A DNA stretch of 64,000 nucleotides, from positions 62,001 to 126,000 of IMG/VR virus record IMGVR_UViG_3300037010_001702; one strand, written 5' to 3'. The notes beneath the pieces are model-generated. The model did no database searches and was not told where the DNA came from. It worked only from the letters and a program-made list of their open reading frames with translations. Position numbers and translations under genes: made by a program. Of this stretch, positions 5,993 through 59,697 are shown one piece after another. Within the stretch, counting starts at the first letter, position 1, and the number at the start of each line of letters is the position of its first letter.

Positions 5993-6754
5993 ATGACGAC
6001 TTATACAGTTACCTGGTCAAGCAACAACGCTGAGGGTATTGCTGGGAAAACAGCAATTTCTATCCCGCAGCAAACGCTCGACACAACATCTACTACACTT
6101 ACCCTCACGGGAAAAGGCACCCAATACGGGCAAATTCAGCAGCAGAACTTCATCCGCTTGCTTGAGAACTTTGCTTCCGTCATTCCTCCTGTTAATCCTA
6201 CAGTGGGACAGCTTTGGTTCAATCCAACTGATGCTGCTCTTTACTGCTGCGCCGAGCTCGCTCAAACGCCAGGACAGACACTTTTCTATCAGTCAAATGG
6301 TAAGGGGTGGATCAATATAGGTAACATTGGTGCTACGTCTGGTCCAATTACGGTGCTCGCGTCCAGTATTATCAATGCACTTGGTTACACACCATACCCA
6401 ACTGAAACAAATCCTAATGGATACATTGCTTCAGTAAGCTCTACAAATATCACTAATGCTCTTGGCTACATCCCATATAATGCAGCCAATCCTAATAGCT
6501 ACATTAGTGCCGCTCAAGCTCCTGTGCAGTCAGTTGCTGGTAAGACGGGGGCAGTTGCCCTCGCTCAAGCTGACATTACTGGTCTTAAGACCACAGACAT
6601 GCCCACCTTCGCTGGAGTAAGCCTTAGAGGAGGTACTGCTGCCGCCATTAATCCTACAGATCCAGTTGATGGAGACATAAAGGTCGCTGGTTCAATCATT
6701 TCAATCTATGCTGCGGGTGGGTGGAACCAAGTATTCCCAGCGGTCTACTCTTAA
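5993..6754 (+). CDS. Short tail fibre / virion structural protein (paralog 1)
   Basis: YG...QQNFIRLLENFAS..PP.NPT.GQLWF anchor domain; two ALGY.PY repeats; VQSVAGKTGAV motif. Confidence 0.8.
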   Translation: MTTYTVTWSSNNAEGIAGKTAISIPQQTLDTTSTTLTLTGKGTQYGQIQQQNFIRLLENFASVIPPVNPTVGQLWFNPTDAALYCCAELAQTPGQTLFYQSNGKGWINIGNIGATSGPITVLASSIINALGYTPYPTETNPNGYIASVSSTNITNALGYIPYNAANPNSYISAAQAPVQSVAGKTGAVALAQADITGLKTTDMPTFAGVSLRGGTAAAINPTDPVDGDIKVAGSIISIYAAGGWNQVFPAVYS

Positions 6755-6766
6755 TTTGGAGACAAT

Positions 6767-8125
6767 ATGGCAGACACGATTTCATGGTCAAGCGGTGGTA
6801 CCGAGGGTATTCTTGGTAAGTCAACTATCACCATCCAAACAAAAAACGTAAACAACGAAGCATCCTCTCTTGCCCTTGTTGGGACTGGGGTTAAAAACTA
6901 TGGACCGATTGAACAGCAAAATATCATTCGTCTACTTGAGAATTTCGCATCCGCTAATCAACCAGCAAACCCAACCATTGGGCAGCTTTGGTTTAACCCA
7001 GTAGATGGTGTTCTTTATTTGTGCGTTGATCCACTACACGTTTCAAATCTAACCATTCACTACCCTGGAAATGGCATTGGCTGGGTTGACATCAGTAGCG
7101 CTCCAAGTTCATCATCGGTTATTTCAGCTCTTGGTTATACGCCATATAACGCAACGAATCCAAGTGGATATATCTCTGGTATTACTTCTGCCAATGTAAT
7201 TTCAGCTCTTGGCTACACACCATATCCAAGCACGAACCCGTACAACTACATCTCTAGCATTACCTACCAGAACGTTGTTACTGCTCTTGGTTTTACGCCA
7301 TACTCGGCTTCAAATCCAAACTCCTACATTTCAAGTAGCTCACCATCTAACATAATATCAGCACTGGGTTACACCCCTGTAAACAAAGCCGGTGATACGA
7401 TGACTGGCAATCTTGTTCTAAGTGCAAATCCAACAGCAGCCATGCATGCTGCCACTAAGCAGTACGTTGATGCTCATGGTGTAACAAGCGTTACTGTTGC
7501 TGGAGCTGCTGGAAGAATAACTGGTGGTGGCACAATTACATCAACTGGAACAGCTACTCTTGATCTCGCTGCCTCTGGGGTAGCTGCTGGCTACTACGGA
7601 ATGGCCAACATCAACGTTGATGCCTATGGTAGAATTACAAGTGCTGGAGCCGGAACTCTTACTGTTCAAGGTGTTGGTGCTCTTGCTGGTGGGGGTGTAA
7701 TTGGACAGGGTGGTACTGCCCAACTAAACATGGCCGCAATTCATGGTGGCGGAACATTTACCAATGCCACCGTTGTTCTTGACAGTTATGGTCGTGTAAC
7801 ATCTGCTGCATCAGGTGCCTCAGGAAGTGGTATTGGTGCTGGACAATCTTGGCATAACGTAAATGGTGCTCGCTCTTTCGGTACTGCATACTATAATCCT
7901 GCAAATGATGGCCGTCCTTGGATGGTTATCTACACCCCCGGTTCATCTGGTGGTCCATCTGGACAGTGCACTGCTGTTGTAAATGGACTTCAAGTCGCGG
8001 CAACCCACTCAGACACTACTAATGGTGGAACTTTCTATCCAATGTCATTTGTTGTTCCTGCGAATGGTTGGTACTATGTAACAAATGACCATAACAATAC
8101 GGCAAGCTGGGTTGAACTTTATTAA
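6767..8125 (+). CDS. Tail fibre protein (paralog 2)
   Basis: Same anchor domain; four ALG[YF]TP repeats; NKAGDTMTG, AATKQYVD, D.YGR.T fibre motifs; GQSW...SFVVP...WVEL tip. Confidence 0.85.
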   Translation: MADTISWSSGGTEGILGKSTITIQTKNVNNEASSLALVGTGVKNYGPIEQQNIIRLLENFASANQPANPTIGQLWFNPVDGVLYLCVDPLHVSNLTIHYPGNGIGWVDISSAPSSSSVISALGYTPYNATNPSGYISGITSANVISALGYTPYPSTNPYNYISSITYQNVVTALGFTPYSASNPNSYISSSSPSNIISALGYTPVNKAGDTMTGNLVLSANPTAAMHAATKQYVDAHGVTSVTVAGAAGRITGGGTITSTGTATLDLAASGVAAGYYGMANINVDAYGRITSAGAGTLTVQGVGALAGGGVIGQGGTAQLNMAAIHGGGTFTNATVVLDSYGRVTSAASGASGSGIGAGQSWHNVNGARSFGTAYYNPANDGRPWMVIYTPGSSGGPSGQCTAVVNGLQVAATHSDTTNGGTFYPMSFVVPANGWYYVTNDHNNTASWVELY

Positions 8126-8134
8126 GGACTAAAA

Positions 8135-8428
8135 ATGCCACACTACAAAGATAGCAACAACCAGGTGTACTGGCTTGATTCCATAGAGATGGAACATCTT
8201 CTTCCAGTAGATGCCGTTAACATTTCCGACAATGAAGTTGAAGTCATAAAGGCTCTTAAATTTCCCCCAAAAACTGGAAATGCTGCACTGCTTGAACAGA
8301 TAGGAATCATAGAAGCTTCAGTTACACCACGCCGATTAAGAGAAGCTGCTTTAACCGAAGCCGGAAAAGCTTGGCTTGCAGACGTGGATTCTCAAATTGC
8401 TGTGCTGAGAAACCAGCTGGTGAAATAA
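8135..8428 (+). CDS. Putative tail fibre assembly chaperone
   Basis: Directly after the fibre; C-terminal IE...TPRRLREAAL......L...D.QI..LR pattern. Confidence 0.65.
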   Translation: MPHYKDSNNQVYWLDSIEMEHLLPVDAVNISDNEVEVIKALKFPPKTGNAALLEQIGIIEASVTPRRLREAALTEAGKAWLADVDSQIAVLRNQLVK

Positions 8429-8477
8429 GGTTACCTAAAACTAATCGAAATTCTGTAACAAAGTAACCAACAAACTG

Positions 8478-8506
8478 TTTACATTCCTAAGAAATCAGGT
8501 TATAAT
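8478..8506 (+). promoter_or_regulatory. Early promoter for the RNA ligase N-half
   Basis: (G)TTTACA-N17-TATAAT. Confidence 0.8.
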
Positions 8507-8528
8507 AACCTATCTAAAGGAAAATAGT

Positions 8529-9116
8529 ATGTTAAAGATTACCGAAGTTGAAGAATTCCGTGAACTTGTAAAGTGCAAGGAAGAAATCCGTGAAGCCCAC
8601 ATCGGTCATGGCTGCACTTCCTTTTGCTACATGGTCTCTGGTCCAGATACCTTTGACTCGGCTGCTGCGCGTGAGTGTCGTGGTATCGTTTTTGACGGTC
8701 CAGATGTTGTTGGTCGTCCTCTTCATAAGTTCTTCAACGTGAATGAGCGTGAAGAAACCCTTCTAAAGAACTTGGATTGGTCAAAGGTTGTGCGAGTTAT
8801 GGATAAGCGAGATGGATGCTGTGACGAAGATACAGTGCTATTCACTATAGATGGCCCAAAGACCATTAAGGATGTGTGTGACTCCAATTACACAGGGTTG
8901 GTCATGGGCTGGAATCATGTCTTGAATGAAGTTCAGTGGACTCCTATTCTGGGTCATGAAGTTAAACCAAATAACAATGATTGGTATGAACTTGAAATGG
9001 AGGATGGAAGCAAGATCAAATTAACTGGAAACCACCTAGTATGGTGTATCAATCAAGAGAGATATGTTCGAGTTGATCAGCTCACAACACAGGATGAAGT
9101 TCAAAAACTGTACTGA
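8529..9116 (+). CDS. rnlA: T4 Rnl1-type RNA ligase N-extein (aa 1-96) fused to split intein N-fragment (aa 97-195)
   Basis: ECRGIVF and RPLHKFFNVNE Rnl1 motifs; motif I KRDG directly followed by intein block A CCDEDT and block B GSKIKLTGNHLVW. Confidence 0.92.
   Translation: MLKITEVEEFRELVKCKEEIREAHIGHGCTSFCYMVSGPDTFDSAAARECRGIVFDGPDVVGRPLHKFFNVNEREETLLKNLDWSKVVRVMDKRDGCCDEDTVLFTIDGPKTIKDVCDSNYTGLVMGWNHVLNEVQWTPILGHEVKPNNNDWYELEMEDGSKIKLTGNHLVWCINQERYVRVDQLTTQDEVQKLY
8817..9113 (+). mobile_element. Split intein N-fragment (IntN, 99 aa)
   Basis: Cys1 at 8817; TxxH; ends YVRVDQLTTQDEV as Hint N-domains do; no C-terminal HN. Confidence 0.9.
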
Positions 9117-10056
9117 GTAATGTGAGAATGAATTGTTCAAGTTCATTATCTGTTTTGGAGTTTATATCATTCTCCCAGATCGAGAGATATCGATATCCAG
9201 ATTCGATCGCAATATTCCGTTTCTTCAGATCTTTGTTCCAAATATCCTTGGCGGCGATTTTAGTTGTTTTGCCTGGAAAGTTTAACAGACTGTTTTCCGT
9301 GTAAAATTTAGGGTTAGCATGCCAGAAGTCTCCTTGAACTTCAAGAACAACATTATTGTTTATCAAAAAATCATATTGAAATCTTTTGATAAAAAATGAA
9401 TATTGAAATGGAACACCAAGGAAAGTTAAACAGTTAGCGACACGGGTTTCAAGTTTATTGATTTTAAAGTATCGTGGTAACGTTCCATTAGTGATCATTG
9501 TATTTTGTTTCTTTTGATGTATTATATACAGTTGTTCATCGGTGAGATTTTCGTATGGATTAACTCTTTTCTTACCATAATGTTCAAGATGAGTTTTAGT
9601 TATTTTGTCTTTGACCTCTGTAAGTTGAAACACATTAACAATGCCGTAACGTTCCTTAAGAGTTCTTTGTCTTGTAATATATCCAACTGAACCTTTAGAC
9701 AGAGCATTTGTAGTGCCATATTTTGTCAAACATGTTTCTCGATATTTCTTTTTAATTGAGTTAGTATTGTTCGCTGTCTCAAGATTTCGTTTGGGAATTC
9801 TATGCATATCTAAGACAAAGTTCAATACCTTAAAATTGACATTAAACATTTTGTAAAAATCAACTGATGAAAGTTCATCTTCAACATACAGCTTATATAT
9901 CAATTCTTTATCAGATAGATTGATCTTTGAATGATTATACGTCAACACATGTAGTTTAAACTCATTTTTGGGATAATCCTTACCACAAGTTTTATAGTGT
10001 GGCAATTTTGATGCAGTTCCACAGATTGGGCATGTTAGTGGTTTATATGGTTTCAT
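9082..10056 (-). mobile_element. Free-standing Vsr-like/DUF559 (PD-(D/E)XK) homing endonuclease
   Basis: CPICG Zn motif; ETCLTKYG/TLKERYG/THLEHYG repeats; KLE...YDF......EVQGDFWH...IWEND nuclease; AT-rich; ATG 10056 preferred because it lies downstream of the late promoter. Confidence 0.85.
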
Positions 10057-10060
10057 ACTA

Positions 10061-10099
10061 TGTATTTCCACGATAGATTTATGATATAATCTATTTATA
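10061..10099. promoter_or_regulatory. Back-to-back promoters: + strand extended -10 TGATATAAT (10082-10090) and - strand late TATAAATA (10092-10099)
   Basis: Motifs read directly from the spacer between the endonuclease and the IntC gene. Confidence 0.65.
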
Positions 10100-10146
10100 G
10101 ACAAACGCAATATAATCACGTTTTTCCATCAGCATGGTACTACTAT

Positions 10147-10248
10147 ATGAAAATTCTAAATATCTCCAAAGTTAAAAGTCAATCTGACCGATATGACATT
10201 CAGACTGGTACTAAAAACTTTTTTGCGAACGGTATTCTCGTCCATAAC
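10147..10248 (+). mobile_element. Split intein C-fragment (IntC, 34 aa)
   Basis: Blocks F/G ending His-Asn, Ser+1 at 10249. Confidence 0.9.
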
Positions 10249-11142
10249 TCATTGATTCATACTGTGAATACAGATCTGGGTGTTAAGCTAAAATCTAAGA
10301 AGACATTTAGCTCAGCCGTTGCACTAGCTGCTGAAAAGTGGATGTATGAGCAGCCTGGACATCATGTCCTGTCTTTTGTGAACTTTGTCACCGCTCAAAA
10401 TTTAACGGCGATCTTTGAATGGACTGCTCCTTCTGCTCGCATCGTTCTCTTCTACCCAGAAGCTGAACTACAATTGCTTCACATTCGCGATAACGTAACT
10501 GGTGTGTACATGGAATCTGAAGACCTTCATAAGTGGGCTGAAGAGTTCAACGTGAAGGTCGTTGAAGAAGTTGAGTTTGCTAATGTCTTCCCTTCTGAAG
10601 ATGCCAACTGGTATCCAGAAGACTACGAAGACGGTAAGTTCAAGCTTGCTGCATTTAACATGGAGCGTGCTAAGTGGCTACATGAAAATGTTGAAGGTGT
10701 AGAAGGTTGGGTATTTCAGTTTGAAGATGGAAACATGGTCAAGCTGAAGACCGACTGGTATATCAAGCGCCACCACGCTATGACATTCATTCGCGAACGC
10801 GATATTGCTCAGCTGGTTCTAGACGAGGGTCTGGATGACATGAAGGCAATGCTGGTTTCTGAAAACGTGAACATTGACCGTATCCTAGAGATCGAACAAA
10901 ATGTGGTTACTGAGCTGAATGTCCTGCGAAAGCTGGTTGATTCAACTGTAAAGGCATGTGAAGGCATGGATCGAAAGACCTTTGCTATCGCACATAACAG
11001 CCACAAGTACTTCTCTCTGCTGATGCGAGCATTTAGTGGGCAAGAACCTAACTACAAGGATTATTTTGAAAAGAATATCCTTAAGGAAAAGTACGGCCAG
11101 GCTCAAGTAGTCATGATGCCATCTATTGCTGAAGGAGATTGA
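10147..11142 (+). CDS. rnlA: Split intein C-fragment (aa 1-34) fused to the Rnl1 RNA ligase C-extein
   Basis: YDIQTGTKNFFANGILVHN|S, then Rnl1 motifs TAIFEWTAP..RIV, LLHIRDNVTG, EGWV, VKLKTDWY. Confidence 0.92.
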   Translation: MKILNISKVKSQSDRYDIQTGTKNFFANGILVHNSLIHTVNTDLGVKLKSKKTFSSAVALAAEKWMYEQPGHHVLSFVNFVTAQNLTAIFEWTAPSARIVLFYPEAELQLLHIRDNVTGVYMESEDLHKWAEEFNVKVVEEVEFANVFPSEDANWYPEDYEDGKFKLAAFNMERAKWLHENVEGVEGWVFQFEDGNMVKLKTDWYIKRHHAMTFIRERDIAQLVLDEGLDDMKAMLVSENVNIDRILEIEQNVVTELNVLRKLVDSTVKACEGMDRKTFAIAHNSHKYFSLLMRAFSGQEPNYKDYFEKNILKEKYGQAQVVMMPSIAEGD

Positions 11143-11216
11143 GATGCGAAAGTTAATGATGGATCGGATCGTGGAGCTGAAGCCGCTATAGCAATAGGAT
11201 AAGTAAAGGACTTGAT

Positions 11217-11597
11217 ATGAAGTTAACAGAAATAAAATACGAAGAAACATGCATTTTGTCTGAATCTGAAATAATGGAGATGGCAAGAATAAAGGAAGCA
11301 GATTCCGGTATTCCTGTTGTTATCTATGTATCAACAAAGCAGTCTGTTAAAGAACACCACGGCCCACGAATTAAAGTTTCAAATATAAAAACTTTTTCTG
11401 ATTCTGATAATTTTGCAATAGATATTTCTAAAAATCCAAGTCCTATTGCTGGAAAAGTTAAACTGAAAAATTCTGAAGTAGATGATATTTGTGATTGGAT
11501 AAAATTAAATTATGAGCCACTTATGAAGTATTGGAATGATGAATACACTAGCGATGCTATTTTCTTTACAGAAATTAAATCACTAAAGGCTTTATAA
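11217..11597 (+). CDS. Hypothetical protein, possibly DUF4160-like; putative head-packaged protein
   Basis: MKLTEI start; EMA.I....SGIPVVIYV...HGPRIKV; AT-rich. Confidence 0.55.
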   Translation: MKLTEIKYEETCILSESEIMEMARIKEADSGIPVVIYVSTKQSVKEHHGPRIKVSNIKTFSDSDNFAIDISKNPSPIAGKVKLKNSEVDDICDWIKLNYEPLMKYWNDEYTSDAIFFTEIKSLKAL

Positions 11598-11857
11598 TGG
11601 TTAAAGTTTATATTGAGATAGACGAGGGTTGGCGCTGGTGGCCAGTTACTGAACAAGATCCAGTGCATCAATATGGGCCTAAGTCAATGTCGATGGAAGT
11701 ACCGCAAGAGCTCTTAACTGAATATAACATTGCGAACACCTTATACCAGAACGTGCAGGAAAAGCTAGAAGCTCTTTATAGAGTGCAAGAAGGAATGAAC
11801 CCACATCCTAATCAAGTGGTTCCAGAATATACACTGTTGAAGGAGAAAACACCTTAA
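11597..11857 (+). CDS. Hypothetical protein
   Basis: 86 aa; TAATG coupling. Confidence 0.65.
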   Translation: MVKVYIEIDEGWRWWPVTEQDPVHQYGPKSMSMEVPQELLTEYNIANTLYQNVQEKLEALYRVQEGMNPHPNQVVPEYTLLKEKTP

Positions 11858-11908
11858 GTATATCTCTAGAAGATGGTATTCAAGCATCTATTTCAAAAGG
11901 ATAAACAT

Positions 11909-12967
11909 ATGAGAAAACTTGCAACAATTAGAAAAATTTCAAAACTATTACCAATTCCCGGCGCAGATGCAATTGAAGTTGCTGTTGTGGATGGGTGGGA
12001 AATAGTCGTGAAAAAAGGAGATTTTGAAGAAGATACTTTAATAGTGATGTGTGAAATCGATTGCTGGGTGCCACATGAGCTTGCTCCATTCCTGTCAAAG
12101 GGAAAGGAACCCCGGGTCTATGAAGGCATTAAGGGTGAGAAGCTTCGCACGGTAAAGTTGCGTGGTGCTCTGTCGCAGGGTCTTCTGCTTCCACTTTCTG
12201 TGCTTGGTAAGCCTGAAGAAGTCTTTTCTATTGGTGATGAATGCATTGGTACTGACGTGTCAGAACAACTTGGTATCATTAAGTGGGAACCAGTTCTTCC
12301 TGCTAATATGGCTGGACAAGTGAAGGGTCTGTTCCCTAGCTTCATTCGCAAGACTGATCAGGAGCGCTGCCAGAACATTGTCGATGAGATTTTCATTGAC
12401 AACAAGGATGCTCGCTACGAAGTTACTATCAAGCTTGATGGTTCTTCTATTACTACTTACAAGTTCCAGCAAGACACTGGTGTCTGCTCTCGTAACCTTG
12501 AACTGGAGATTAACGAAGAGAACAAGGACAACTCGTTTGTTAAGATGTTCCAGGGTTCTATGCTTCAGGCTGTTCTTGATAAGATGGGTAAGAACATTGC
12601 AGTTCAAGGTGAGCTGATGGGTCCTTGTATCCAAGGCAACCGTGAAAACTTCAAGGATACAAAGTTCTTTATCTTCGAAGCGCAGTTCATTGATGATCAG
12701 CGTAAGCTGACACCTGATGAAAGAAAGGCTCTGTTTGCTGAACTTATGGAATGCGGCGCAGATGCACATATTGTGAATCACGTGCCTATCCTACACTACA
12801 ATGTTACTCTTGCTGAGCTTGGCATCTTCAATGTTGAAGACCTTCTAAAGTTTGCTGATGGCCCGTCGATTAACAACCCTATTAGGGAAGGATTGGTGTT
12901 CAAGCGAATGGACGGTGGATTCTCGTTCAAGGCAATTTCGAATAAATTTTTGGAAAAGGAAAAATGA
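11909..12967 (+). CDS. RNA ligase, DRB0094/Rnl5 family
   Basis: MRKLATIRKI..L.PIPGAD.IE...VDGW.IVVKKG OB domain; KTDQERCQN, KLDGSS, QGELMG, REGLVFK, SFKAISN. Confidence 0.92.
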   Translation: MRKLATIRKISKLLPIPGADAIEVAVVDGWEIVVKKGDFEEDTLIVMCEIDCWVPHELAPFLSKGKEPRVYEGIKGEKLRTVKLRGALSQGLLLPLSVLGKPEEVFSIGDECIGTDVSEQLGIIKWEPVLPANMAGQVKGLFPSFIRKTDQERCQNIVDEIFIDNKDARYEVTIKLDGSSITTYKFQQDTGVCSRNLELEINEENKDNSFVKMFQGSMLQAVLDKMGKNIAVQGELMGPCIQGNRENFKDTKFFIFEAQFIDDQRKLTPDERKALFAELMECGADAHIVNHVPILHYNVTLAELGIFNVEDLLKFADGPSINNPIREGLVFKRMDGGFSFKAISNKFLEKEK

Positions 12968-19037: not shown

Positions 19038-19237
19038 TGAAAAAGAATCTCATTATAATGCTTGAACTTACCATTGAGGACCCTAAAGGTCCTCTTGATG
19101 AAGGGCATCTTGCGCAAATTAAAGAACAAGTAGAAGTAGCTACTCAAGGTTCTTTTGCACGAGCAGTATGGAACTTTGGCTGCTTTACTGATGCCGAAGT
19201 AAAAGAAATGCATGTCGTAGAGAGCTATGGCTTCTGA
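19037..19237 (+). CDS. Hypothetical protein
   Basis: 66 aa coupled ORF. Confidence 0.55.
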   Translation: MKKNLIIMLELTIEDPKGPLDEGHLAQIKEQVEVATQGSFARAVWNFGCFTDAEVKEMHVVESYGF

Positions 19238-21956
19238 TCGCAATTATGTAGCAGCATGGGCCGACTATAAGGCTGACAAGATCATCGTGCTGGAGCGCGA
19301 CAAAGCTGGCACATTGTTCCGTGTTAAATATAATCCCCCATATTACTTCTACGTCCCTGATGAAGATGGTGACTACGAAAGTATTTGGGGCGATAAGCTT
19401 CTTCGCGCAGAGTTCTCTTCTCGTGATGAGTTTGAAGCTGCTAAGAAACATTTCCCTAGAAAGTTTGAATCTGACTTCACCCCGCTGAAACGGGTGCTGA
19501 TGGATTATTACTATAACAGACCAGCTCCGCCAATCAACTTTGCATTCCTTGATATCGAAGTTAATTATTCTAAGAAGTTAGGATTCGCAAGTCCAACAAA
19601 TCCTTATGCAGAAATAAATGCAGTAACGATTTATCAATCATGGACTAAAAAGTTCATCACACTGGTTCTTCCACCTATGGTGGATGGTGTTCTGTGGACT
19701 AATATACCTGGCAACTCTCTTCACACACTTAATGATGCAATCACTACACTCATTAGTGAAAAGAAACTGCGTGATGGATGTATTCCAGATATTGAAATTG
19801 TTATGACGGAGTATGAGCTCTTGTCTAAGATGTGTCAGGCAATTGAAGAAGCTGACATTATCTCTGGATGGAACTCTGAATTCTTTGATATCCCATACAT
19901 CGCAGAAAGATTGCTTCTTGCTGGGGGTGAAAGCTTTCTAGCTAAGCTTGAACACTACGGTGCCCGTCCTCCTAAGAAGGAGATGGTAAACCGTTTTGGT
20001 TCAGAAGAACCAGTCTATAAGTTCTCTGGCCGTAGCCACCTTGACTACATGAAGCTTTTCCAGAAGTTTACCTTTGAAGGTCGCACATCATATGCGCTTG
20101 GTAATATCCTTCAAGAAGAAGTTGGTGTAGGTAAGCTAGAATATGAAGGGTCACTTGAAGATCTTTATCACTATGACTTTCCTCTGTTTGTAGCATACAA
20201 CTTCCGAGACGTTGATGGGCTGGTCCAGCTCAACGATAAATTCAAATTCATCGCACTCGCCAATCAAATGGCTCACGAGAATACGGTTCTATTTGATGCT
20301 GTTCTCGGCACGGTGTCTTATGTTGAGACTGGGATTACTAATCATGCACATAATGTTCTGAATAAAATTGTTCATGACAAGGTAATGGGCAGTCATAACA
20401 AGGTTGAGGGGGCAATTGTTATGACACCCAGGATTGGTTTGCATGAATGGATTGGTTCTGTTGACATTAACTCCCTATATCCGAACGTTATCCGCTCGCT
20501 TAACATCTCTCCTGAAAAGATTGTTGGTCAATTCACTGCCAAGGAAGATGCGTGGCGTGATATTAGGGATGCTAACTCCAAGCGTCACTGCTTTATCTTT
20601 GAAGATGGAACGCAGGAAATTAAGACTGCTGAAGAATGGGGTGAGTTTCTTACTGAGAACAAGCTTGCGGTATCAGCATATGGTACAGTGTTTGACCAAG
20701 GAAATGGTCGCGGTGTTGTAGCAGACATTCTGCAATATTGGTATTCTGAAAGGAAAAGATTACAGGCTGAAAAGAAGAAGTATGCTAAGCTTGCTAAGGA
20801 TGAAACGGACCCAGTTAAGAAGGCCGAGTATCAAAAGCTAGAAGAAGATTTTGACTTGCTCCAGCTAACTAAGAAGATTTCTATGAACTCGCTTTATGGT
20901 TCACTTTTGAATATTGCATTCCGTTTTGGTGATGAGCGCATGGGAGCTTCTGTTACCGGTTCTGGCCGCGCCATTACAACCCACATGATCGAAACCATTG
21001 GTGAGATCATCACTGGCAGGCTTGACAAGTTGGTCAAGACAACTACTACTGACAAGGATGGTAAGCTTGTTCATGAATACTTCTCACCAAATGGCTCGAT
21101 CATCTACGGTGATACCGACTCCTGTTACTACAAGACATATGCAACTAACAAGGAAGATGCAATCGAAGCTGCTGACGCAGCTGCTGACGGTGTGAATGCT
21201 TCATTCCCACCATTCATGCGAAAAGCTTTCAAGTGCCAACCAGAATTTGATCAACTCATCAAGGCTGGTCGTGAAATTGTTGGTGTTCGCGGATTGTTTC
21301 AGGCTAAGAAGAAGTACATGGTCAAGGTAGTTGACATGGAAGGATTCGCAGTCAGCAAGATGAAGTCCATGGGGTCAGAAATTAAAAAAGCTGATACCCC
21401 AAAAGTGATTCAAGCATTCCTGAAAGAAACGGTCGATATGATTTTGGAAGGTCGCTCTTATCCTGAGGTGGTGGAGTATGTAAATGAGCAGCGGATTGAA
21501 ATCCTGAAAAAGAATAAGCTCAGCATCTTCTCCCTAGGGGTTGCAAAGCAAGTAAATAGTCTAGACAAATACATGGCTGAATATCTAAACCCAGGAACGC
21601 AGAAGTCCTTGGATAAGAATGGTAAAATGCGCAGTCTAACTATTCCAGGTCATGTGAAGGCAGCTTTGAACTACAACAAAGCTCTTCAGCACTTTGATAA
21701 GGGTTCAAAAGAAATCCATTCAGGTGATAAAGTGGTTCAGTTCTACCTTAAGAAGAATGAATTTGGCTTTGAGACAATTGCATTCCCATCTGAGTTGTCA
21801 AAGTTCCCGCCTTGGTTCCTTGATAACTTCCAAGTCAATGTAAAAATGACAGAGGATAAGATGTTTGACAACAAGCTGGCTGGGATATTCTCAGCCCTTG
21901 GTAAGGATGTTCCCTCTCCACAATCCGTTTTAACACACAAAATACTGACTTTCTAA
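19227..21956 (+). CDS. gp43: Family B DNA polymerase (gp43-like)
   Basis: Exonuclease motifs DIE, GWNSEFFD, YN..D; polymerase motifs DINSLYP, KISMNSLYG, YGDTDS, KKKY. Confidence 0.97.
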   Translation: MASDRNYVAAWADYKADKIIVLERDKAGTLFRVKYNPPYYFYVPDEDGDYESIWGDKLLRAEFSSRDEFEAAKKHFPRKFESDFTPLKRVLMDYYYNRPAPPINFAFLDIEVNYSKKLGFASPTNPYAEINAVTIYQSWTKKFITLVLPPMVDGVLWTNIPGNSLHTLNDAITTLISEKKLRDGCIPDIEIVMTEYELLSKMCQAIEEADIISGWNSEFFDIPYIAERLLLAGGESFLAKLEHYGARPPKKEMVNRFGSEEPVYKFSGRSHLDYMKLFQKFTFEGRTSYALGNILQEEVGVGKLEYEGSLEDLYHYDFPLFVAYNFRDVDGLVQLNDKFKFIALANQMAHENTVLFDAVLGTVSYVETGITNHAHNVLNKIVHDKVMGSHNKVEGAIVMTPRIGLHEWIGSVDINSLYPNVIRSLNISPEKIVGQFTAKEDAWRDIRDANSKRHCFIFEDGTQEIKTAEEWGEFLTENKLAVSAYGTVFDQGNGRGVVADILQYWYSERKRLQAEKKKYAKLAKDETDPVKKAEYQKLEEDFDLLQLTKKISMNSLYGSLLNIAFRFGDERMGASVTGSGRAITTHMIETIGEIITGRLDKLVKTTTTDKDGKLVHEYFSPNGSIIYGDTDSCYYKTYATNKEDAIEAADAAADGVNASFPPFMRKAFKCQPEFDQLIKAGREIVGVRGLFQAKKKYMVKVVDMEGFAVSKMKSMGSEIKKADTPKVIQAFLKETVDMILEGRSYPEVVEYVNEQRIEILKKNKLSIFSLGVAKQVNSLDKYMAEYLNPGTQKSLDKNGKMRSLTIPGHVKAALNYNKALQHFDKGSKEIHSGDKVVQFYLKKNEFGFETIAFPSELSKFPPWFLDNFQVNVKMTEDKMFDNKLAGIFSALGKDVPSPQSVLTHKILTF

Positions 21957-28021: not shown

Positions 28022-29338
28022 ATGGATTCAGAAAAGCAAAAAGTTATGTTGAGTTGCATGTTAGGTAATCGAGACCTAATGGCAATGTGTTCAGGTATAA
28101 TTAAGCCATCCTACTTTGACCCTTCGCTCAAGAAGACAGTGAAGTTCATGCAAGAGTATTTTACGAAATATAAGGATGTGCCCAAGTTAGGTGCCGTGAA
28201 GGCTGAGACTGGTATTACACTTGAAGATCTTGGTAAGATTGAAAAGTCTGACATGAACTATGTCTCTACTGAAGTAGAAGAGTTCTGCCGCAATCGAGCA
28301 ATCACCGAAGCAATCCTACAGGGCCCAGACCTTCTTGAAAAGGGAGACTTCGGCGAAATTTTGAGGACACTTCGAGATGCCATCTCAGTGGGTCTTCAAC
28401 GCGATCTTGGTATGGATTACTTTGCTAATCCTGAAGAACGCATGAAGCGCACCCATGATACATCAGCTAGAATCTCCACTGGCATCCAAGAGCTTGACGA
28501 TCTTATCGGTGGCGGAATGTCTCGGCAGGAACTTCTCATGTTTGCCGCTAACTCTGGTGGTGGTAAGTCGATGAACATGTTGAACATCGCTAAAAATTTC
28601 CTGGCTCAAGGGTTGCATGGCGTTTATATTTCCCTTGAAATGTCTGAGGATGTTGTGTCAAAGAGACTTGACTCCATGATCACTAAGATTGCCCAGGAGA
28701 ACCTACTTAGGGAACTCACAAAGGCCGCTAACCTGGTTGAAAAGGCAAGTGAGACATATGGTAAGTTCCGGGTCAAGAGAATGCCCGAGAATCGAACCAA
28801 TATAAATACAATTCGATCATGGTTACAGCAGTTAGAGCAGACAGAAGGTTTTGTACCTGACTTTATCTGCGTAGATTATCTTGACATCATGGGTACCACT
28901 ATGAACATCTCGCTGGATAATCTGTTCATCAAGGATAAGTACGTTACTGAAGAAGTTAGAAGCTTAGGTTTTGACTATAATGCCATTATGATCTCCGCAT
29001 CTCAACTTGGACGTACAGCGATTGAGGCAGACAAGTTAAATCAGGCTCACATTCAAGGCGGCATCTCCAAGATAAATACAGCTGACTATGTAATCGGTAT
29101 TAAGCAGGATGACTTAATGAAAGCTGCTGGCGAAATTTACTACGAGTGCCTAAAGTCTCGTAATTCAAGTGGAGTTGGCAACCGAGCATTGTTAGGATGG
29201 GATGCAATCTCACTAACTGTTTCTTCTCTCAAGAAGAAAGGAGCTCTCGTCTTTAAGCCAAAGGTTAATATCGTGTTAGACGAGCGACAACCATCAACCA
29301 AGAAAGCAGACGGCTTATCAAGCCTGATGAATATTTAA
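28022..29338 (+). CDS. gp41: Replicative SF4 helicase (gp41/DnaB-like)
   Basis: ANSGGGKS, YISLEM, VDYLD, ASQLGR, KSR. Confidence 0.95.
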   Translation: MDSEKQKVMLSCMLGNRDLMAMCSGIIKPSYFDPSLKKTVKFMQEYFTKYKDVPKLGAVKAETGITLEDLGKIEKSDMNYVSTEVEEFCRNRAITEAILQGPDLLEKGDFGEILRTLRDAISVGLQRDLGMDYFANPEERMKRTHDTSARISTGIQELDDLIGGGMSRQELLMFAANSGGGKSMNMLNIAKNFLAQGLHGVYISLEMSEDVVSKRLDSMITKIAQENLLRELTKAANLVEKASETYGKFRVKRMPENRTNINTIRSWLQQLEQTEGFVPDFICVDYLDIMGTTMNISLDNLFIKDKYVTEEVRSLGFDYNAIMISASQLGRTAIEADKLNQAHIQGGISKINTADYVIGIKQDDLMKAAGEIYYECLKSRNSSGVGNRALLGWDAISLTVSSLKKKGALVFKPKVNIVLDERQPSTKKADGLSSLMNI

Positions 29339-49800: not shown

Positions 49801-51022
49801 GAAGCGTGTATGTACCATCACCATTAAAGTTAATAGCCCAGTGAGTGGAAACGTTTGTGTAGCCAAGGGAGTCAGTATGTACCTCAATCGCTGGATATGT
49901 TGTGTTAGCTGGTCTAGCTGAACCGGGAGCAAAGGTAGGGACACCCACCATAGCAATAGGATTTGTCTTGATGAGTGACCACGATTCTTCTGGAGCTGTA
50001 GGAGCTACAACAATGCGAGAATGCGGTGTTAGCGTGATCGTATTGCCAACAAGCATCTCAGTAATACCGTCAAGAGCTGGTCCCATCTTAAATGAGATGA
50101 TTGGATTTACAAAGCTGCCATTCAAAACTGTGACGCCAATATCACCCGAGATTGATCCCTTTACATTTACGTAGTTGAGGTCATCAGGATTTGAAGCGAG
50201 AGTAACTGGGTCAACTATAATAGTTGAATTACCAAAATTGTCAACGCGCGTAAGAGTCCACTCTTCATAGTTGCCACCAGTAATTCCAGTTACTGTAGCA
50301 AATGGTTTAGTTACATCAGCATAGAGGAGAGTACCTTCATTCTCAGGGAATGCTGTAGCGTCCTTTACATTTCTATCCTTCCAGCGCTGAAGTGGTGCGC
50401 CGCTGCCCTGAATAACGTCAAATGAATAAACGCCACGAGACAAGAAGTAGTCAACCGTATCTTGGCAATGAAGTGTAGCATCATATGGGTTAGAATCTGC
50501 TGGTAGGTTAGGAGTGTAAAGTGGGTCCCGCTCGATGCGGTACTTGTACTGTCGTACGTCAGTGATGCCCGGCCCATCCCATCTAATGTTGCTGAATACC
50601 CTGTTTGTTGAGATGTTACCAATCCCAGGAATTTGCGTGTCATCATCAACTCTTCCAGGACGGCGAATGTTATCAATGCCAGCGTAAAACTCCGATCTGG
50701 ATGAGTGGCTAGCGAACTTATTAACCGATGTAAGTGGTACCTGCCACGTCGTTCTGCTACCATCGGACATGATGTCATGGTACCAAGATTGTGAACGACG
50801 AGCTCTAATCTTAGGTGTGCCTATCTTTGGAGATATATCTGCCCCAAGGATGGCAAGAAGCTGGTCATCCTCATCAATCTTTACGTTAACGTCATCATGA
50901 AAGATGTACTGTTCAACAATGGCGGAAAGCTTTACGTGATAAGGCTTTACGTCAAGTACGTAATTGATAAGACTATCAATGTGCCCACTGCTGACGGTTA
51001 AGTAATTGTTAGTAGAGCTCAT
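46871..51022 (-). CDS. Large baseplate-associated protein with Asp-box beta-propeller
   Basis: YV.DVKPYHVKL N-terminus; repeated S.DG..W motifs; YD..PYD repeats; start 51022 preferred to 51052. Confidence 0.75.
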   Translation of the reverse strand: MSSTNNYLTVSSGHIDSLINYVLDVKPYHVKLSAIVEQYIFHDDVNVKIDEDDQLLAILGADISPKIGTPKIRARRSQSWYHDIMSDGSRTTWQVPLTSVNKFASHSSRSEFYAGIDNIRRPGRVDDDTQIPGIGNISTNRVFSNIRWDGPGITDVRQYKYRIERDPLYTPNLPADSNPYDATLHCQDTVDYFLSRGVYSFDVIQGSGAPLQRWKDRNVKDATAFPENEGTLLYADVTKPFATVTGITGGNYEEWTLTRVDNFGNSTIIVDPVTLASNPDDLNYVNVKGSISGDIGVTVLNGSFVNPIISFKMGPALDGITEMLVGNTITLTPHSRIVVAPTAPEESWSLIKTNPIAMVGVPTFAPGSARPANTTYPAIEVHTDSLGYTNVSTHWAINFNGDGTYTLQAINASGKLYGTNGLTINLADGCGYKDDYIQFTLIPSLDGYFAGDSFNFTVGDKVEHYLVYGSISGWQPNAVIGEWYWNGKIGLKIPKLEYFAHAYNSTILTSVDASNGDWKISVANGQIVKSVEFNNGIFYITGADSIVGTSTDGVTWTSDLTTIFPTQLNYLVTIGPNGTAGVGVQDPAVYAIDSTTGYPANPADYIHVAVDPSTGYPYLPLRPAIIWEKAVTHVNEDLNGFVQVANALTDPSNPSTLLSVTVVVGNSGTIISTVNGSGWATQSSGVTTNLNDITFGNSILVAVGEHGTILTSVNRIDWVQVPSNTVNHLSAVTYSATLGMFIAVGDRGTILRSLDGSTWANLSVFNDGTFSDIIFAAGKFVGVDNVDGWVSSSIDGYSWTRYRGRRLNSIAYGNGTFVGGGGTPYDLTNFVPLPLTAAYTPPAVIPAGINGPEIDPVPHSSAEPSFYTITFVSSTTATVVSNVYGQLAGLKIDTPWTDGRAAFKIPSMANGIPYQVGDVIHIYLAPMYSYTTDVGYDESEYWVHGYDAEVGECTVPLIFNQEIFPLYHSHGSVIFKNVTDRDKFIIDKAANDTFKFRIEGANLLFPELAPDSNDWIPITLKYYDRIANNVPVSAAEFSDLATYIEGYLGSNPDVKVFHILQPRYETSNRNASATIVLDSAFVSQYLKFGTNFSLMFLPDQSYGQKIRVKITENFRTYARVRLNFQDISSINIADEPIQYLDIIEDISLVDIVNAHIIEGGAASISTGGYDVLPYGATAYDDSTTGIVTGIVESPAGSGNYEYTGNDSDWVIINPTPGPSISITQSTGDVPNVDGDTAVQASTAIIEGLTIMERECPIDPDPTTGYDAYAYDSYPYDTDLDFVAAKFVLFFDMNVQTTGMVVTQAADEYMVVVQNRSYSGSPTISLEQLIANTLPSGEVVYTGTGVYDAPIPSSIVFPAMPQLTDANSFTFKTTLSVPFRLTLS

Positions 51023-59624: not shown

Positions 59625-59697
59625 ATGTGGGCGTACTCAAATAGTCTAAGAAGTTGATATGATATTTATCCAACTTCTCAAAGCCCCAAAAATGTGA

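What the first reader, a model, noticed from the sequence alone, without database searches (positions are those of the whole stretch)
8529..11142. Fractured RNA ligase: a natural split intein cuts T4 Rnl1-type ligase inside its adenylation motif
Seen: ORF 8529-9116 encodes the Rnl1 N-part ending in motif I K-R-D-G, followed directly by a 99 aa IntN (Cys1 at 8817, block B TGNH). ORF 10147-11142 opens with a 34 aa IntC ending VHN, followed by S-L-I and the rest of Rnl1. Joining gives KRDG|SLI, matching T4 Rnl1 KEDGSL, in a 393 aa product (96+297). IntN has an acidic half and IntC a basic N-terminus. Known: fractured genes (split intein plus free-standing endonuclease) are described in phage gp41, NrdA/NrdJ, IMPDH, DnaE, terminase and DNA ligase; I do not recall an RNA ligase host. 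Inference: the catalytic Lys and motifs III-V lie on separate polypeptides, so RNA repair strictly depends on protein trans-splicing. The pair is a candidate new orthogonal split intein with a G|S junction. The block F His position is Lys (GTKNFF).
Basis: partly seen in the sequence, partly recalled or inferred. Interest (0 to 1): 0.92.

Follow-up and report, generated by a model that had tools for sequence, protein, structure and literature searches.

The report
Phage RNA ligase split by intein
An uncultivated jumbo phage carries its T4-type RNA ligase 1 gene in two pieces, cut in the catalytic KxDG motif by a mobile cassette (split intein plus homing endonuclease) that should rejoin the halves by protein splicing. 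The arrangement is real and apparently unreported for this enzyme, but it is a known kind, and the intein is a relative of the well-studied NrdJ-1.

Summary
ORF 8529-9116 is the Rnl1 N-part (96 aa, ending K-R-D-G) plus a 99 aa IntN. ORF 10147-11142 is a 34 aa IntC (ending VHN) plus the 297 aa Rnl1 C-part, which starts with Ser. Between them, on the minus strand, lies a 324 aa free-standing homing endonuclease of the EDxHD/Vsr-like family.

Intein-free alleles in related phages read KRDG-SMIH with no gap at the junction. In another phage the IntN-endonuclease-IntC cassette is 88-97% identical in DNA, while the flanking ligase is only about 64% identical. The identity steps fall at the two splice junctions. 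All three cassette genes are under purifying selection (dN/dS about 0.1-0.2).

This is a "fractured gene" in the sense of Dassa et al. 2009. I found no paper describing Rnl1 as host. The intein is not a new type: both halves hit NrdJ-1 best, so orthogonality to NrdJ-1 is doubtful. The Lys at the block F His position is one of many substitutions in this family. The arrangement is common in metagenomes, with at least 58 clusters of C-halves. Related inteins also sit at motif I of other RNA and DNA ligases. Splicing itself is inferred, not shown.

Verdict: new member of a known kind, moderate interest.

The parts
8478..8506 (+). Sigma-70-like promoter match (TTTACA, 17 nt, TATAAT; 11 of 12) ahead of the N-half. 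An AAGGA ribosome-binding site lies about 8 nt before the ATG at 8529.
   Evidence: Consensus match only; function not shown.
8529..8816 (+). Rnl1 N-extein, 96 aa, ending in motif I K93-R-D-G96 (catalytic lysine).
   Evidence: Pfam RNA_lig_T4_1 positions 1-55, E 5.8e-10. Aligns to T4 Rnl1 2C5U up to KEDG. phrog_562, E 3e-17.
8817..9116 (+). IntN, 99 aa plus stop. Cys1 at 8817; block B TGNH at IntN residues 70-73; Trp and Tyr at the positions of NrdJ-1 Tyr83 and Tyr89; net charge -9.
   Evidence: Pfam Intein_splicing positions 12-92. Best PDB hit is NrdJ-1 8UBS, E 2.6e-5. Residue comparison. dN/dS 0.08-0.10.
9082..10056 (-). Free-standing homing endonuclease gene, 324 aa from the conserved ATG at 10056 (ORF listing extends it to a GTG at 10119). 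It has an N-terminal CxxC..H..C motif, a helical DUF7487 region and a C-terminal EDxHD/Vsr-like nuclease domain. It overlaps the IntN 3' end by 35 nt in antisense.
   Evidence: Vsr, E 0.0066. Same start in L001. Homologues align from residue ~24-29. Conserved E239, D243, H246, D276. AF2 pLDDT 91.7. Foldseek: I-Bth0305I catalytic domain 3R3P with TM 0.68-0.74, and Vsr 1CW0. dN/dS 0.11-0.19.
10082..10100 (.). Invariant spacer block. The + strand reads TGATATAAT (extended -10-like). It is followed by the reverse complement of TATAAATA (minus strand 10099-10092, a T4-type late-promoter box) 36 nt before the endonuclease ATG. These may be back-to-back promoters for the C-half and for the endonuclease.
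   Evidence: (TATAAATA 9 times in the window against 2.3 expected). The block is kept even in the endonuclease-less allele L004. Function inferred only.
10147..10248 (+). IntC, 34 aa. Block F has Asp and has Lys at the His position; it ends V-H-N; net charge +3.
   Evidence: Pfam Intein_splicing positions 122-155. NCBIfam intein_Cterm above its cutoff. Best PDB hit is NrdJ-1 8UBS, E 1e-6. dN/dS 0.10-0.12.
10249..11142 (+). Rnl1 C-extein, 297 aa plus stop. It begins with Ser+1 (S-L-I-H) and carries motifs III, IV and V and the Rnl1 C-terminal domain.
   Evidence: Pfam RNA_lig_T4_1 positions 63-227 and T4_Rnl1_C. phrog_562, E 8e-51, from profile position 107. Alignment to 2C5U. Motif positions.

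Best explanation
This is a fractured Rnl1 gene. A 1432-bp mobile cassette (8817-10248: IntN, an antisense EDxHD homing endonuclease gene, IntC) sits in frame between the Gly of motif I and the next Ser.

Inferred protein-splicing mechanism:
1. The two halves are translated separately.
2. The acidic IntN and basic IntC associate into a HINT fold.
3. Class 1 splicing follows: an N-S acyl shift at Gly96-Cys97, then transfer of the N-extein to Ser+1, then cyclisation of Asn34 helped by His33, then an O-N shift.
4. The product is a 393 aa Rnl1 with the native KRDG-SLIH sequence. Only this product has the adenylated Lys93 and motifs III-V in one active site.

Inferred mobility: the endonuclease cuts intein-free Rnl1 alleles of co-infecting phages near the motif I codons, and recombinational repair copies the whole cassette in.

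Shown here: the architecture, the homology, the catalytic residues, purifying selection, empty-site alleles and recent horizontal transfer of the cassette.

Inferred only: splicing, endonuclease cleavage and the timing of expression.
For: - Architecture and domain hits.
- Seamless junction against T4 Rnl1.
- Empty-site alleles: P0016-P0020, P0028, P0031 and P0034 read (R/M)DG-S(M/T)(I/L). L006 is colinear with the joined window flanks, has no gap at the junction and shares the downstream synteny.
- Splicing residues are conserved. K, D, G, Cys1 and T-G-N-H are invariant in 17 N-halves. HN and Ser+1 are present in 59 of 59 C-halves. Aromatic residues stand at the NrdJ-1 Tyr83/Tyr89 accelerator positions.
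- Closest solved relative is NrdJ-1, an experimentally ultrafast Ser+1 split intein.
- A natural contiguous 127 aa mini-intein sits at the same site in L015. Its model best matches 8UBS (TM 0.80, rmsd 2.7 A).
- dN/dS is 0.08-0.19 for IntN, IntC and the endonuclease.
- Mosaic against L008: cassette 88-97% nt identity, exteins 64-65%. Identity falls abruptly at 10248 and rises near 8808. Cassette dS is 0.10-0.37 while extein dS is saturated.
- The endonuclease fold matches I-Bth0305I and Vsr. I-Bth0305I is known to cut the uninterrupted allele next to its insertion site.
- The same arrangement recurs in L001, L002, L008, L013 and L014. Variants have a sense-strand endonuclease (L005) or none (L004).
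Against: - No experiment here shows a spliced product, adenylation or DNA cleavage.
- The block F His that NrdJ-1 work lists among the autocatalytic residues is Lys here. The position is free to vary across the family, but kinetics could differ.
- ORF2 has no clear Shine-Dalgarno sequence.
- The -1 residue is Gly, whereas NrdJ-1's native -1 is Cys. NrdJ-1 is reported to tolerate most -1 residues.
- The promoter and hairpin assignments are consensus-level only. The hairpin z-score is -1.66.
Confidence: 0.85

Rival explanations
1. Decaying relic. The intein no longer splices, Rnl1 is effectively a pseudogene in two pieces, and the intact downstream DRB0094-type ligase covers the phage's needs.
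For: An intact second RNA ligase lies at 11873-12967. Lys stands at the block F His position. The ribosome-binding site of ORF2 is weak.
Against: dN/dS is about 0.1 on IntN and IntC and is low on the endonuclease. All ligase motifs and splicing nucleophiles are intact. The arrangement is kept in lineages whose exteins are only 57-69% identical. The same synteny, second ligase included, occurs in intein-free relatives, so the second ligase is not a replacement.
Confidence: 0.06
2. Non-covalent reconstitution. The intein halves serve only as a dimerisation device, and the two ligase pieces work as a heterodimer without splicing. The intein-less genes-in-pieces NrdA of phage Aeh1 is a precedent for split genes that retain function.
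For: Split genes that retain function without splicing exist (reference to Friedrich et al. 2007 seen). Tight IntN/IntC binding is typical; NrdJ-1 has a Kd of 68 nM.
Against: Every residue needed for splicing chemistry is conserved: Cys1, TGNH, HN, and Ser+1 in 59 of 59. A mere dimeriser would not need these. A ~133 aa HINT domain would also sit one residue after motif I, inside the nucleotide-binding pocket.
Confidence: 0.05
3. Joining at the RNA or translation level (group I/II intron, bypassing), or an assembly chimera, rather than protein splicing.
For: None found. Phage genes are often interrupted by endonuclease-bearing group I introns.
Against: No Rfam intron or other RNA family is found in 8000-12000; the only hit has E 0.49. 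The insert encodes both intein halves in frame with the exteins. The endonuclease is on the opposite strand. The sequence is identical in two independent IMG/VR contigs, and the arrangement recurs in many loci.
Confidence: 0.02

Closest known systems
Fractured genes of Dassa et al. 2009 (split intein plus free-standing GIY-YIG or Vsr-like endonuclease in gp41, NrdA, NrdJ, IMPDH, DnaE, DNA ligase, terminase)
   Same: Two adjacent same-strand ORFs each carry half of a conserved enzyme fused to half of an intein. A Vsr-like endonuclease ORF lies between them. A TATAAATA late-promoter box sits in the endonuclease 5' region. IntN and IntC carry opposite charges. The origin is phage.
   Different: The host enzyme is Rnl1, an RNA ligase, which is not among the eight host types listed in that paper. 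The endonuclease is antisense here and overlaps the IntN 3' end.
NrdJ-1 split intein (PDB 8UBS/9OMB; ultrafast, Ser+1)
   Same: It is the best solved relative of both halves. It shares the Cys1, T-x-x-H and HN|S chemistry, an aromatic pair at positions 83/89, an acidic IntN with a basic IntC, and the canonical split site.
   Different: The host is different (class II RNR, native junction NPC|SEI, against Rnl1 KRDG|SLI). The halves are shorter (99 + 34 aa against 105 + 40). Lys replaces the block F His29. IntN is only about one-third identical over 81 aligned residues.
I-Bth0305I, prototype of the EDxHD homing endonuclease family (PDB 3R3P)
   Same: The C-terminal catalytic domain has the same fold (TM 0.68-0.74) and the same conserved E, D, H, D residues. 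There is a separate N-terminal DNA-binding region.
   Different: I-Bth0305I is encoded in a recA group I intron. This one is free-standing inside a split intein. Sequence identity is about 20%. Its target site is unknown.
T4 RNA ligase 1 (RnlA/gp63; PDB 2C5U, 5TT6)
   Same: It has the adenylyltransferase domain with motifs I, III, IV and V and the Rnl1-specific C-terminal domain.
   Different: The gene is in two pieces. Identity to T4 Rnl1 is only about 30%, and it is below the NCBIfam equivalog cutoff. The closest cultured relative is the uninterrupted gene of Ralstonia jumbo phage RsoM2USA, at 36%.
Contiguous LAGLIDADG intein in the RNA ligase of cluster J mycobacteriophages (e.g. Phoebus gp158)
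   Same: The intein is inserted directly after motif I (KLHG|C ... VHN|S) of a phage RNA ligase. Its C-terminal 23 residues are 65-70% identical to this IntC.
   Different: It is a contiguous 800 aa precursor with an in-frame LAGLIDADG endonuclease. The host is a PF09414/PHA02142-type ligase, not Rnl1.

Membership tests
Class 1 intein (HINT), naturally split | Nucleophile (Cys/Ser) as first intein residue, directly after the N-extein | tested here: met
   Cys97 of ORF1 follows KRDG. It is invariant in 17 related N-halves.
Class 1 intein (HINT), naturally split | Block B T-x-x-H | tested here: met
   TGNH at IntN residues 70-73. It is invariant in alignment A1.
Class 1 intein (HINT), naturally split | C-terminal His-Asn followed by a Ser/Thr/Cys +1 extein residue | tested here: met
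   VHN|S. Ser+1 is present in 59 of 59 family members. NCBIfam intein_Cterm is above its cutoff.
Class 1 intein (HINT), naturally split | Block F Asp and His | tested here: inconclusive
   The Asp is present (YDIQT). The His position is Lys. Across the family that position is H 21, N 20, E 8, Q 4, K 3 and others, so it is not a defining residue for this clade. Its kinetic effect is unknown.
Class 1 intein (HINT), naturally split | HINT fold | tested here: met
   Both halves hit NrdJ-1 8UBS by sequence. The model of the contiguous relative in L015 matches 8UBS with TM 0.80. The window's own halves were not modelled together.
Class 1 intein (HINT), naturally split | Protein trans-splicing activity | not testable with these tools
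   Needs co-expression and mass spectrometry.
Fractured gene (Dassa 2009) | Host gene halves adjacent on one strand, each fused in frame to an intein half, with uninterrupted homologues elsewhere | tested here: met
Fractured gene (Dassa 2009) | Free-standing homing endonuclease ORF between the halves | tested here: met
   EDxHD/Vsr-like ORF at 9082-10056 on the minus strand.
T4 Rnl1 (RnlA) family | Pfam RNA_lig_T4_1 and T4_Rnl1_C above gathering scores | tested here: met
   39.8 and 55.6 bits against 28.3; T4_Rnl1_C 39.6 against 27.
T4 Rnl1 (RnlA) family | NCBIfam TIGR02308 equivalog cutoff (242 bits) | tested here: not met
   34.4 and 127 bits for the two pieces searched apart. It is a family homologue, not a called equivalog. 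Splitting the protein lowers the score.
T4 Rnl1 (RnlA) family | Nucleotidyltransferase motifs I (KxDG), III, IV, V | tested here: met
   KRDG, FEW, EGWV and KLKTDW align to the T4 motifs.
T4 Rnl1 (RnlA) family | ATP-dependent RNA end-joining activity | not testable with these tools
   Needs an enzyme assay.
EDxHD (Vsr-like) homing endonucleases | Vsr-type nuclease fold with conserved Glu, Asp, His, Asp | tested here: met
   Foldseek hits to 3R3P and 1CW0. E239 and H246 are invariant, and D243 and D276 nearly invariant, in 44 homologues. The motif layout matches the description.
EDxHD (Vsr-like) homing endonucleases | Site-specific cleavage of the empty allele | not testable with these tools
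   Only indirect evidence: a recently transferred cassette with boundaries at the splice junctions.
NrdJ-1 intein allele | Insertion in class II ribonucleotide reductase at the NPC|SEI site | tested here: not met
   The host is Rnl1 and the junction is KRDG|SLI. It is a relative, not an allele.

The most novel reading that the evidence does not exclude
The fracture may be more than a tolerated parasite and may act as a post-translational timer. The N-half would be made from an early sigma-70-like promoter. The C-half would be made from its own extended -10-like promoter in the conserved spacer. The antisense endonuclease would be transcribed from a T4-type late promoter whose transcript runs into the N-half message. 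Active Rnl1 (RNA repair, and possibly tail-fibre attachment) would then exist only in a defined window of infection.

A second, more likely extension is that this NrdJ-1-like intein/EDxHD cassette is a specialist of motif I. It may move between Rnl1, PF09414 RNA ligases, ATP- and NAD-dependent DNA ligases and NrdJ.
Probability: 0.12. Interest if true: 0.7.

Novelty: new member of a known kind. Interest (0 to 1): 0.5.

Why it matters
1. It adds RNA repair (Rnl1) to the enzymes known to be fractured by split inteins, which so far were DNA replication, repair and packaging enzymes. The cut lies one residue after the catalytic motif I.
2. The related loci give an unusually complete natural series of the homing cycle at one site:
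   - empty site (L006);
   - contiguous mini-intein (L015);
   - split intein without endonuclease (L004);
   - split with a sense-strand endonuclease (L005);
   - split with an antisense endonuclease (window, L001, L008).
   One pair shows that the cassette moved recently between ligase genes that are only about 64% identical.
3. NrdJ-1 is valued in protein engineering because it is fast and uses Ser+1. The 59 natural IntC variants and their partner IntN sequences are a ready pool for studying specificity, orthogonality and the dispensability of the block F His.
4. Genome annotation pipelines call these halves 'RNA ligase' or 'hypothetical protein' and miss the arrangement.

Tried and rejected
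- Near-identity DNA search of 8400-11300 against GenBank phages gave no match. The phage is uncultivated. Its closest cultured relatives are the jumbo phages RsoM2USA and PA5oct, at about 30-37% protein identity.
- Sequence search of the endonuclease against the PDB gave only noise. Its family came from NCBIfam (weak Vsr hit), the family alignment and the fold search.
- An RNA intron was rejected because Rfam finds nothing.
- The RNA hairpin over the endonuclease ribosome-binding site, as described for other fractured genes, is weak here (z -1.66, 12 of 200 shuffles fold as well). It is only partly conserved in L001. I do not rely on it.
- I looked for a polynucleotide kinase-phosphatase partner near the ligase and found none in 11-18 kb. 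There is only a PTH2-like hydrolase, an AAA_28/thymidylate-kinase-like P-loop protein and an RNase T-like exonuclease.
- A pattern scan of the window for further inteins or EDxHD genes found none.
- Papers that mention both inteins and RNA ligase (phage CBB, Lactobacillus phages, Campylobacter phage IBB_35, cluster J, the jumbo-phage survey) do not connect the two. The actinobacteriophage intein survey lists RtcB-type ligases only.
- MAFFT misplaced the last ~17 IntN residues in alignment A4. The model of the L015 intein is therefore of moderate confidence (pLDDT 77). I use it only for the fold assignment.
- No joined or read-through protein was given to any tool.
Full report
**What is there.** The ORFs are at the stated coordinates.
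- ORF 8529-9116 (+, 195 aa) is an Rnl1 N-terminal piece. It matches Pfam RNA_lig_T4_1 positions 1-55 and phrog_562. An intein N-terminal region follows (Intein_splicing positions 12-92).
- ORF 10147-11142 (+, 331 aa) starts with an intein C-terminal region (Intein_splicing positions 122-155; NCBIfam intein_Cterm above its cutoff). It continues with RNA_lig_T4_1 positions 63-227 and the Rnl1-specific C-terminal domain.
- The intein begins at Cys97 (nt 8817), directly after K93-R-D-G96. IntN is 99 aa with TGNH at residues 70-73. IntC is 34 aa ending V-H-N, followed by S-L-I-H.
- Against the T4 Rnl1 crystal sequence (2C5U), the N-extein ends on the Gly of KEDG and the C-extein begins at the very next residue.
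- The catalytic Lys is therefore on one polypeptide, and motifs III, IV and V are on the other. The joined product would be 393 aa.

**The gene between the halves.** A 345-codon ORF lies on the minus strand at 9082-10119.
- Homologues align only from residue ~24-29. The ATG at 10056 (M-K-P-Y-K-P-L) is the start conserved in L001. The protein is therefore 324 aa.
- It hits phage homing-endonuclease PHROGs and DUF7487, and weakly hits Vsr.
- It belongs to a very large family: 7454 representatives at 50% clustering have E up to 0.001.
- In 44 homologues E239, G242 and H246 are invariant and D243, D276 and K279 nearly so. There is an N-terminal CxxC..H..C motif.
- The AlphaFold model (pLDDT 91.7) has a C-terminal domain that matches the catalytic domain of I-Bth0305I (3R3P, TM 0.68-0.74) and Vsr (1CW0).
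- This is the Vsr-like family first seen in fractured genes, later named EDxHD and shown to cut the uninterrupted allele beside the insertion site.
- The gene is antisense to the ligase and overlaps the IntN 3' end by 35 nt.

**Empty sites and the spliced junction.** Several close relatives of the ligase lack the insert and read ...MDKRDG-SMIH... (P0016-P0020, P0028, P0031, P0034).
- The contig of P0028 (L006) has the same downstream genes, including the second RNA ligase.
- It aligns colinearly with the window's joined flanks at 75% nt identity, with no gap at the junction.
- The insert is therefore exactly 8817-10248 (1432 bp), and the predicted spliced sequence is the native one.

**The cassette is mobile and functional.** The same arrangement occurs in L001/L002, L013/L014 and L008.
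- Against L008, the exteins are 64-65% identical in DNA. IntN is 92%, the endonuclease 88% and IntC 97% identical.
- In 30-nt steps, identity rises at about 8808 and falls abruptly at 10248. These are the two splice junctions.
- Synonymous divergence of the cassette is 0.10-0.37, while that of the exteins is saturated. The cassette therefore entered one of these ligase genes long after the genes diverged.
- dN/dS is 0.08-0.15 for IntN, 0.10-0.12 for IntC and 0.11-0.19 for the endonuclease. All three are kept by selection.
- Across 58 clusters of C-halves, IntC stays 56-82% identical while most C-exteins fall to about 20-25%.

**Relatives of the intein.** Both halves have NrdJ-1 (8UBS/9OMB) as best solved relative (E 2.6e-5 and 1e-6).
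- NrdJ-1 is an experimentally ultrafast split intein. It needs Ser+1, tolerates most flanking residues, and has a native junction of NPC|SEI.
- The window intein keeps Cys1, the block B His, an aromatic pair at the Tyr83/Tyr89 accelerator positions (Trp and Tyr), the block F Asp, His-Asn and Ser+1. It has Lys where NrdJ-1 has His29.
- In 59 related IntC sequences that position is H 21, N 20, E 8, Q 4, K 3, R 1, S 1, G 1. The Lys is an ordinary variant for this clade.
- L015 encodes a contiguous 127 aa mini-intein at the same Rnl1 site, also with Lys. Its model best matches 8UBS (TM 0.80, rmsd 2.7 A).
- L004 has the split intein with only 27 nt between the halves and no endonuclease. L005 has the endonuclease on the sense strand.

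**How widespread.**
- At least 15 N-half clusters and 58 C-half clusters exist in public metagenomes. Nine divergent C-extein groups that I tested are all Rnl1, starting at the same profile position. The family also includes NrdJ-like halves (P0085, P0093).
- IMG/VR holds 41 further loci with related IntN sequences, mostly at Kx(D/H/E)G|C.
- Hosts include PF09414 RNA ligases, an ATP-dependent DNA ligase and an NAD-dependent DNA ligase.
- No fractured Rnl1 was found among GenBank phage genomes.
- Cluster J mycobacteriophages have a contiguous LAGLIDADG intein with a related C-terminus after KLHG in a PF09414-type RNA ligase.

**Expression signals (weak evidence).**
- A near-consensus sigma-70-like promoter and a good ribosome-binding site precede ORF1.
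- The spacer before ORF2 holds an invariant block. It reads TGATATAAT on the + strand, next to TATAAATA on the minus strand, 36 nt before the endonuclease ATG.
- TATAAATA occurs 9 times in the window against 2.3 expected, often just upstream of ORFs. This agrees with T4-type late promoters and with what was reported for other fractured genes.
- The block survives in the endonuclease-less L004, which suggests the endonuclease was lost there by deletion.
- ORF2 lacks a clear Shine-Dalgarno sequence.

**Alternatives.**
- No intron or other RNA family is detected.
- The sequence is identical in two independent IMG/VR contigs.
- A dead relic is unlikely given the selection on both intein halves.
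- A purely non-covalent complex would not need the fully conserved splicing residues.

**Literature.** Dassa et al. list gp41, IMPDH, DnaE, NrdA, NrdJ, DNA ligase, terminase and one unknown protein as fractured hosts. Searches combining split intein or intein with RNA ligase, Rnl1 or RnlA found no report of this arrangement. The actinobacteriophage survey reports inteins in RtcB-type ligases only. InBase itself could not be consulted.

**Verdict.** This is a genuine, selectively maintained and recently mobile fractured Rnl1 gene. It is a new host for a known kind of element. Its intein belongs to the NrdJ-1 family and is not a new or demonstrably orthogonal one. Splicing and homing are inferred from strong comparative evidence and remain to be shown at the bench.

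Noticed in passing
window 11873-12967 (+); L003:656-3168: A second, intact RNA ligase (PHA02142 OB domain plus PF09414; NCBIfam DRB0094 family at 207 bits against a cutoff of 151) lies 0.7 kb downstream. In another phage (L003) this ligase type is itself fractured at KMDG|CC by a related split intein and a DUF7487 endonuclease on the sense strand.
   Followed up: partly
window 1741, 4494, 5909, 10092(-), 25325, 26099, 28801, 29718, 43947(-): TATAAATA occurs 9 times against 2.3 expected (0 of 100 shuffles reach 9). Several copies lie just upstream of ORF starts, for example at 1749, 5993, 29756 and 43902(-). This suggests T4-type late promoters in this jumbo phage.
   Followed up: partly
window 10082-10100; L001, L004, L008, L013 spacers: An invariant block combines a + strand extended -10-like TGATATAAT with a minus-strand TATAAATA. 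It is also retained in the endonuclease-less split allele L004. It may be a pair of divergent promoters.
   Followed up: partly
L015:4106-4486 (IMGVR_UViG_3300027983_000058): A contiguous 127 aa mini-intein sits at the same motif I site of an Rnl1-like gene (EKLDG|CC ... VHN|ST). It appears to be the unsplit form of this intein family.
   Followed up: yes
L009:905-3304 (Mycobacterium phage Phoebus gp158) and relatives Beem, Dallas, Bobby, KashFlow, Hannaconda: The 800 aa 'RNA ligase' (annotated 'HNH endonuclease' in Hannaconda) is a PF09414/PHA02142 ligase. It holds a LAGLIDADG intein after KLHG. The intein is not mentioned in the record annotation.
   Followed up: partly
L040:5257-6216, L048:5297-6997, L030-L038: Related split inteins fracture an ATP-dependent DNA ligase (PKLDG|C), an NAD-dependent DNA ligase and several PF09414 RNA ligases. 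In two loci the cut is two residues later (KLDGEN|C). The intein family seems tied to motif I of covalent nucleotidyltransferases.
   Followed up: partly
window 5993-8428: The fractured ligase lies directly after tail-fibre-like genes (5993-6754, 6767-8125) and a weak tail-fibre-assembly hit (8135-8428). T4 Rnl1 (gp63) also promotes tail-fibre attachment, so both activities would depend on splicing if the second one is conserved.
   Followed up: no
window 9085-10056 (-), model ma0d92ecdd557: The best whole-length Foldseek hits of the endonuclease model are helical-repeat proteins of the Toxoplasma mitoribosome (E about 3e-4, TM only 0.27). This may reflect a shared 'helical repeats plus Vsr-like (RAP/FASTK-type) nuclease domain' layout.
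   Followed up: no
L001:3742-4056, L002:2674-2988, L008:1149-1469: A cREC_REC gene lies a few genes upstream of the fractured Rnl1 in related phages. It belongs to the phosphoesterase family proposed to heal 2',3'-cyclic ends for RNA ligases. It is not in the same position in the window. No Pnkp was seen in 11-18 kb.
   Followed up: no
P0085, P0093: These NrdJ-like C-halves carry an IntC of the same family (...HN|SEIILRD). Pfam finds two intein stretches in P0085, which suggests a further intein in the same protein.
   Followed up: no
window 19227-21956, 28022-29338, 51009-63411 (-): Context genes are a family B DNA polymerase, a DnaB-like helicase, a 2871 aa virion protein and a 1237 aa baseplate wedge protein. 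The contigs reach 239-290 kb. The window comes from an uncultivated jumbo myophage distantly related to RsoM2USA and PA5oct.
   Followed up: partly
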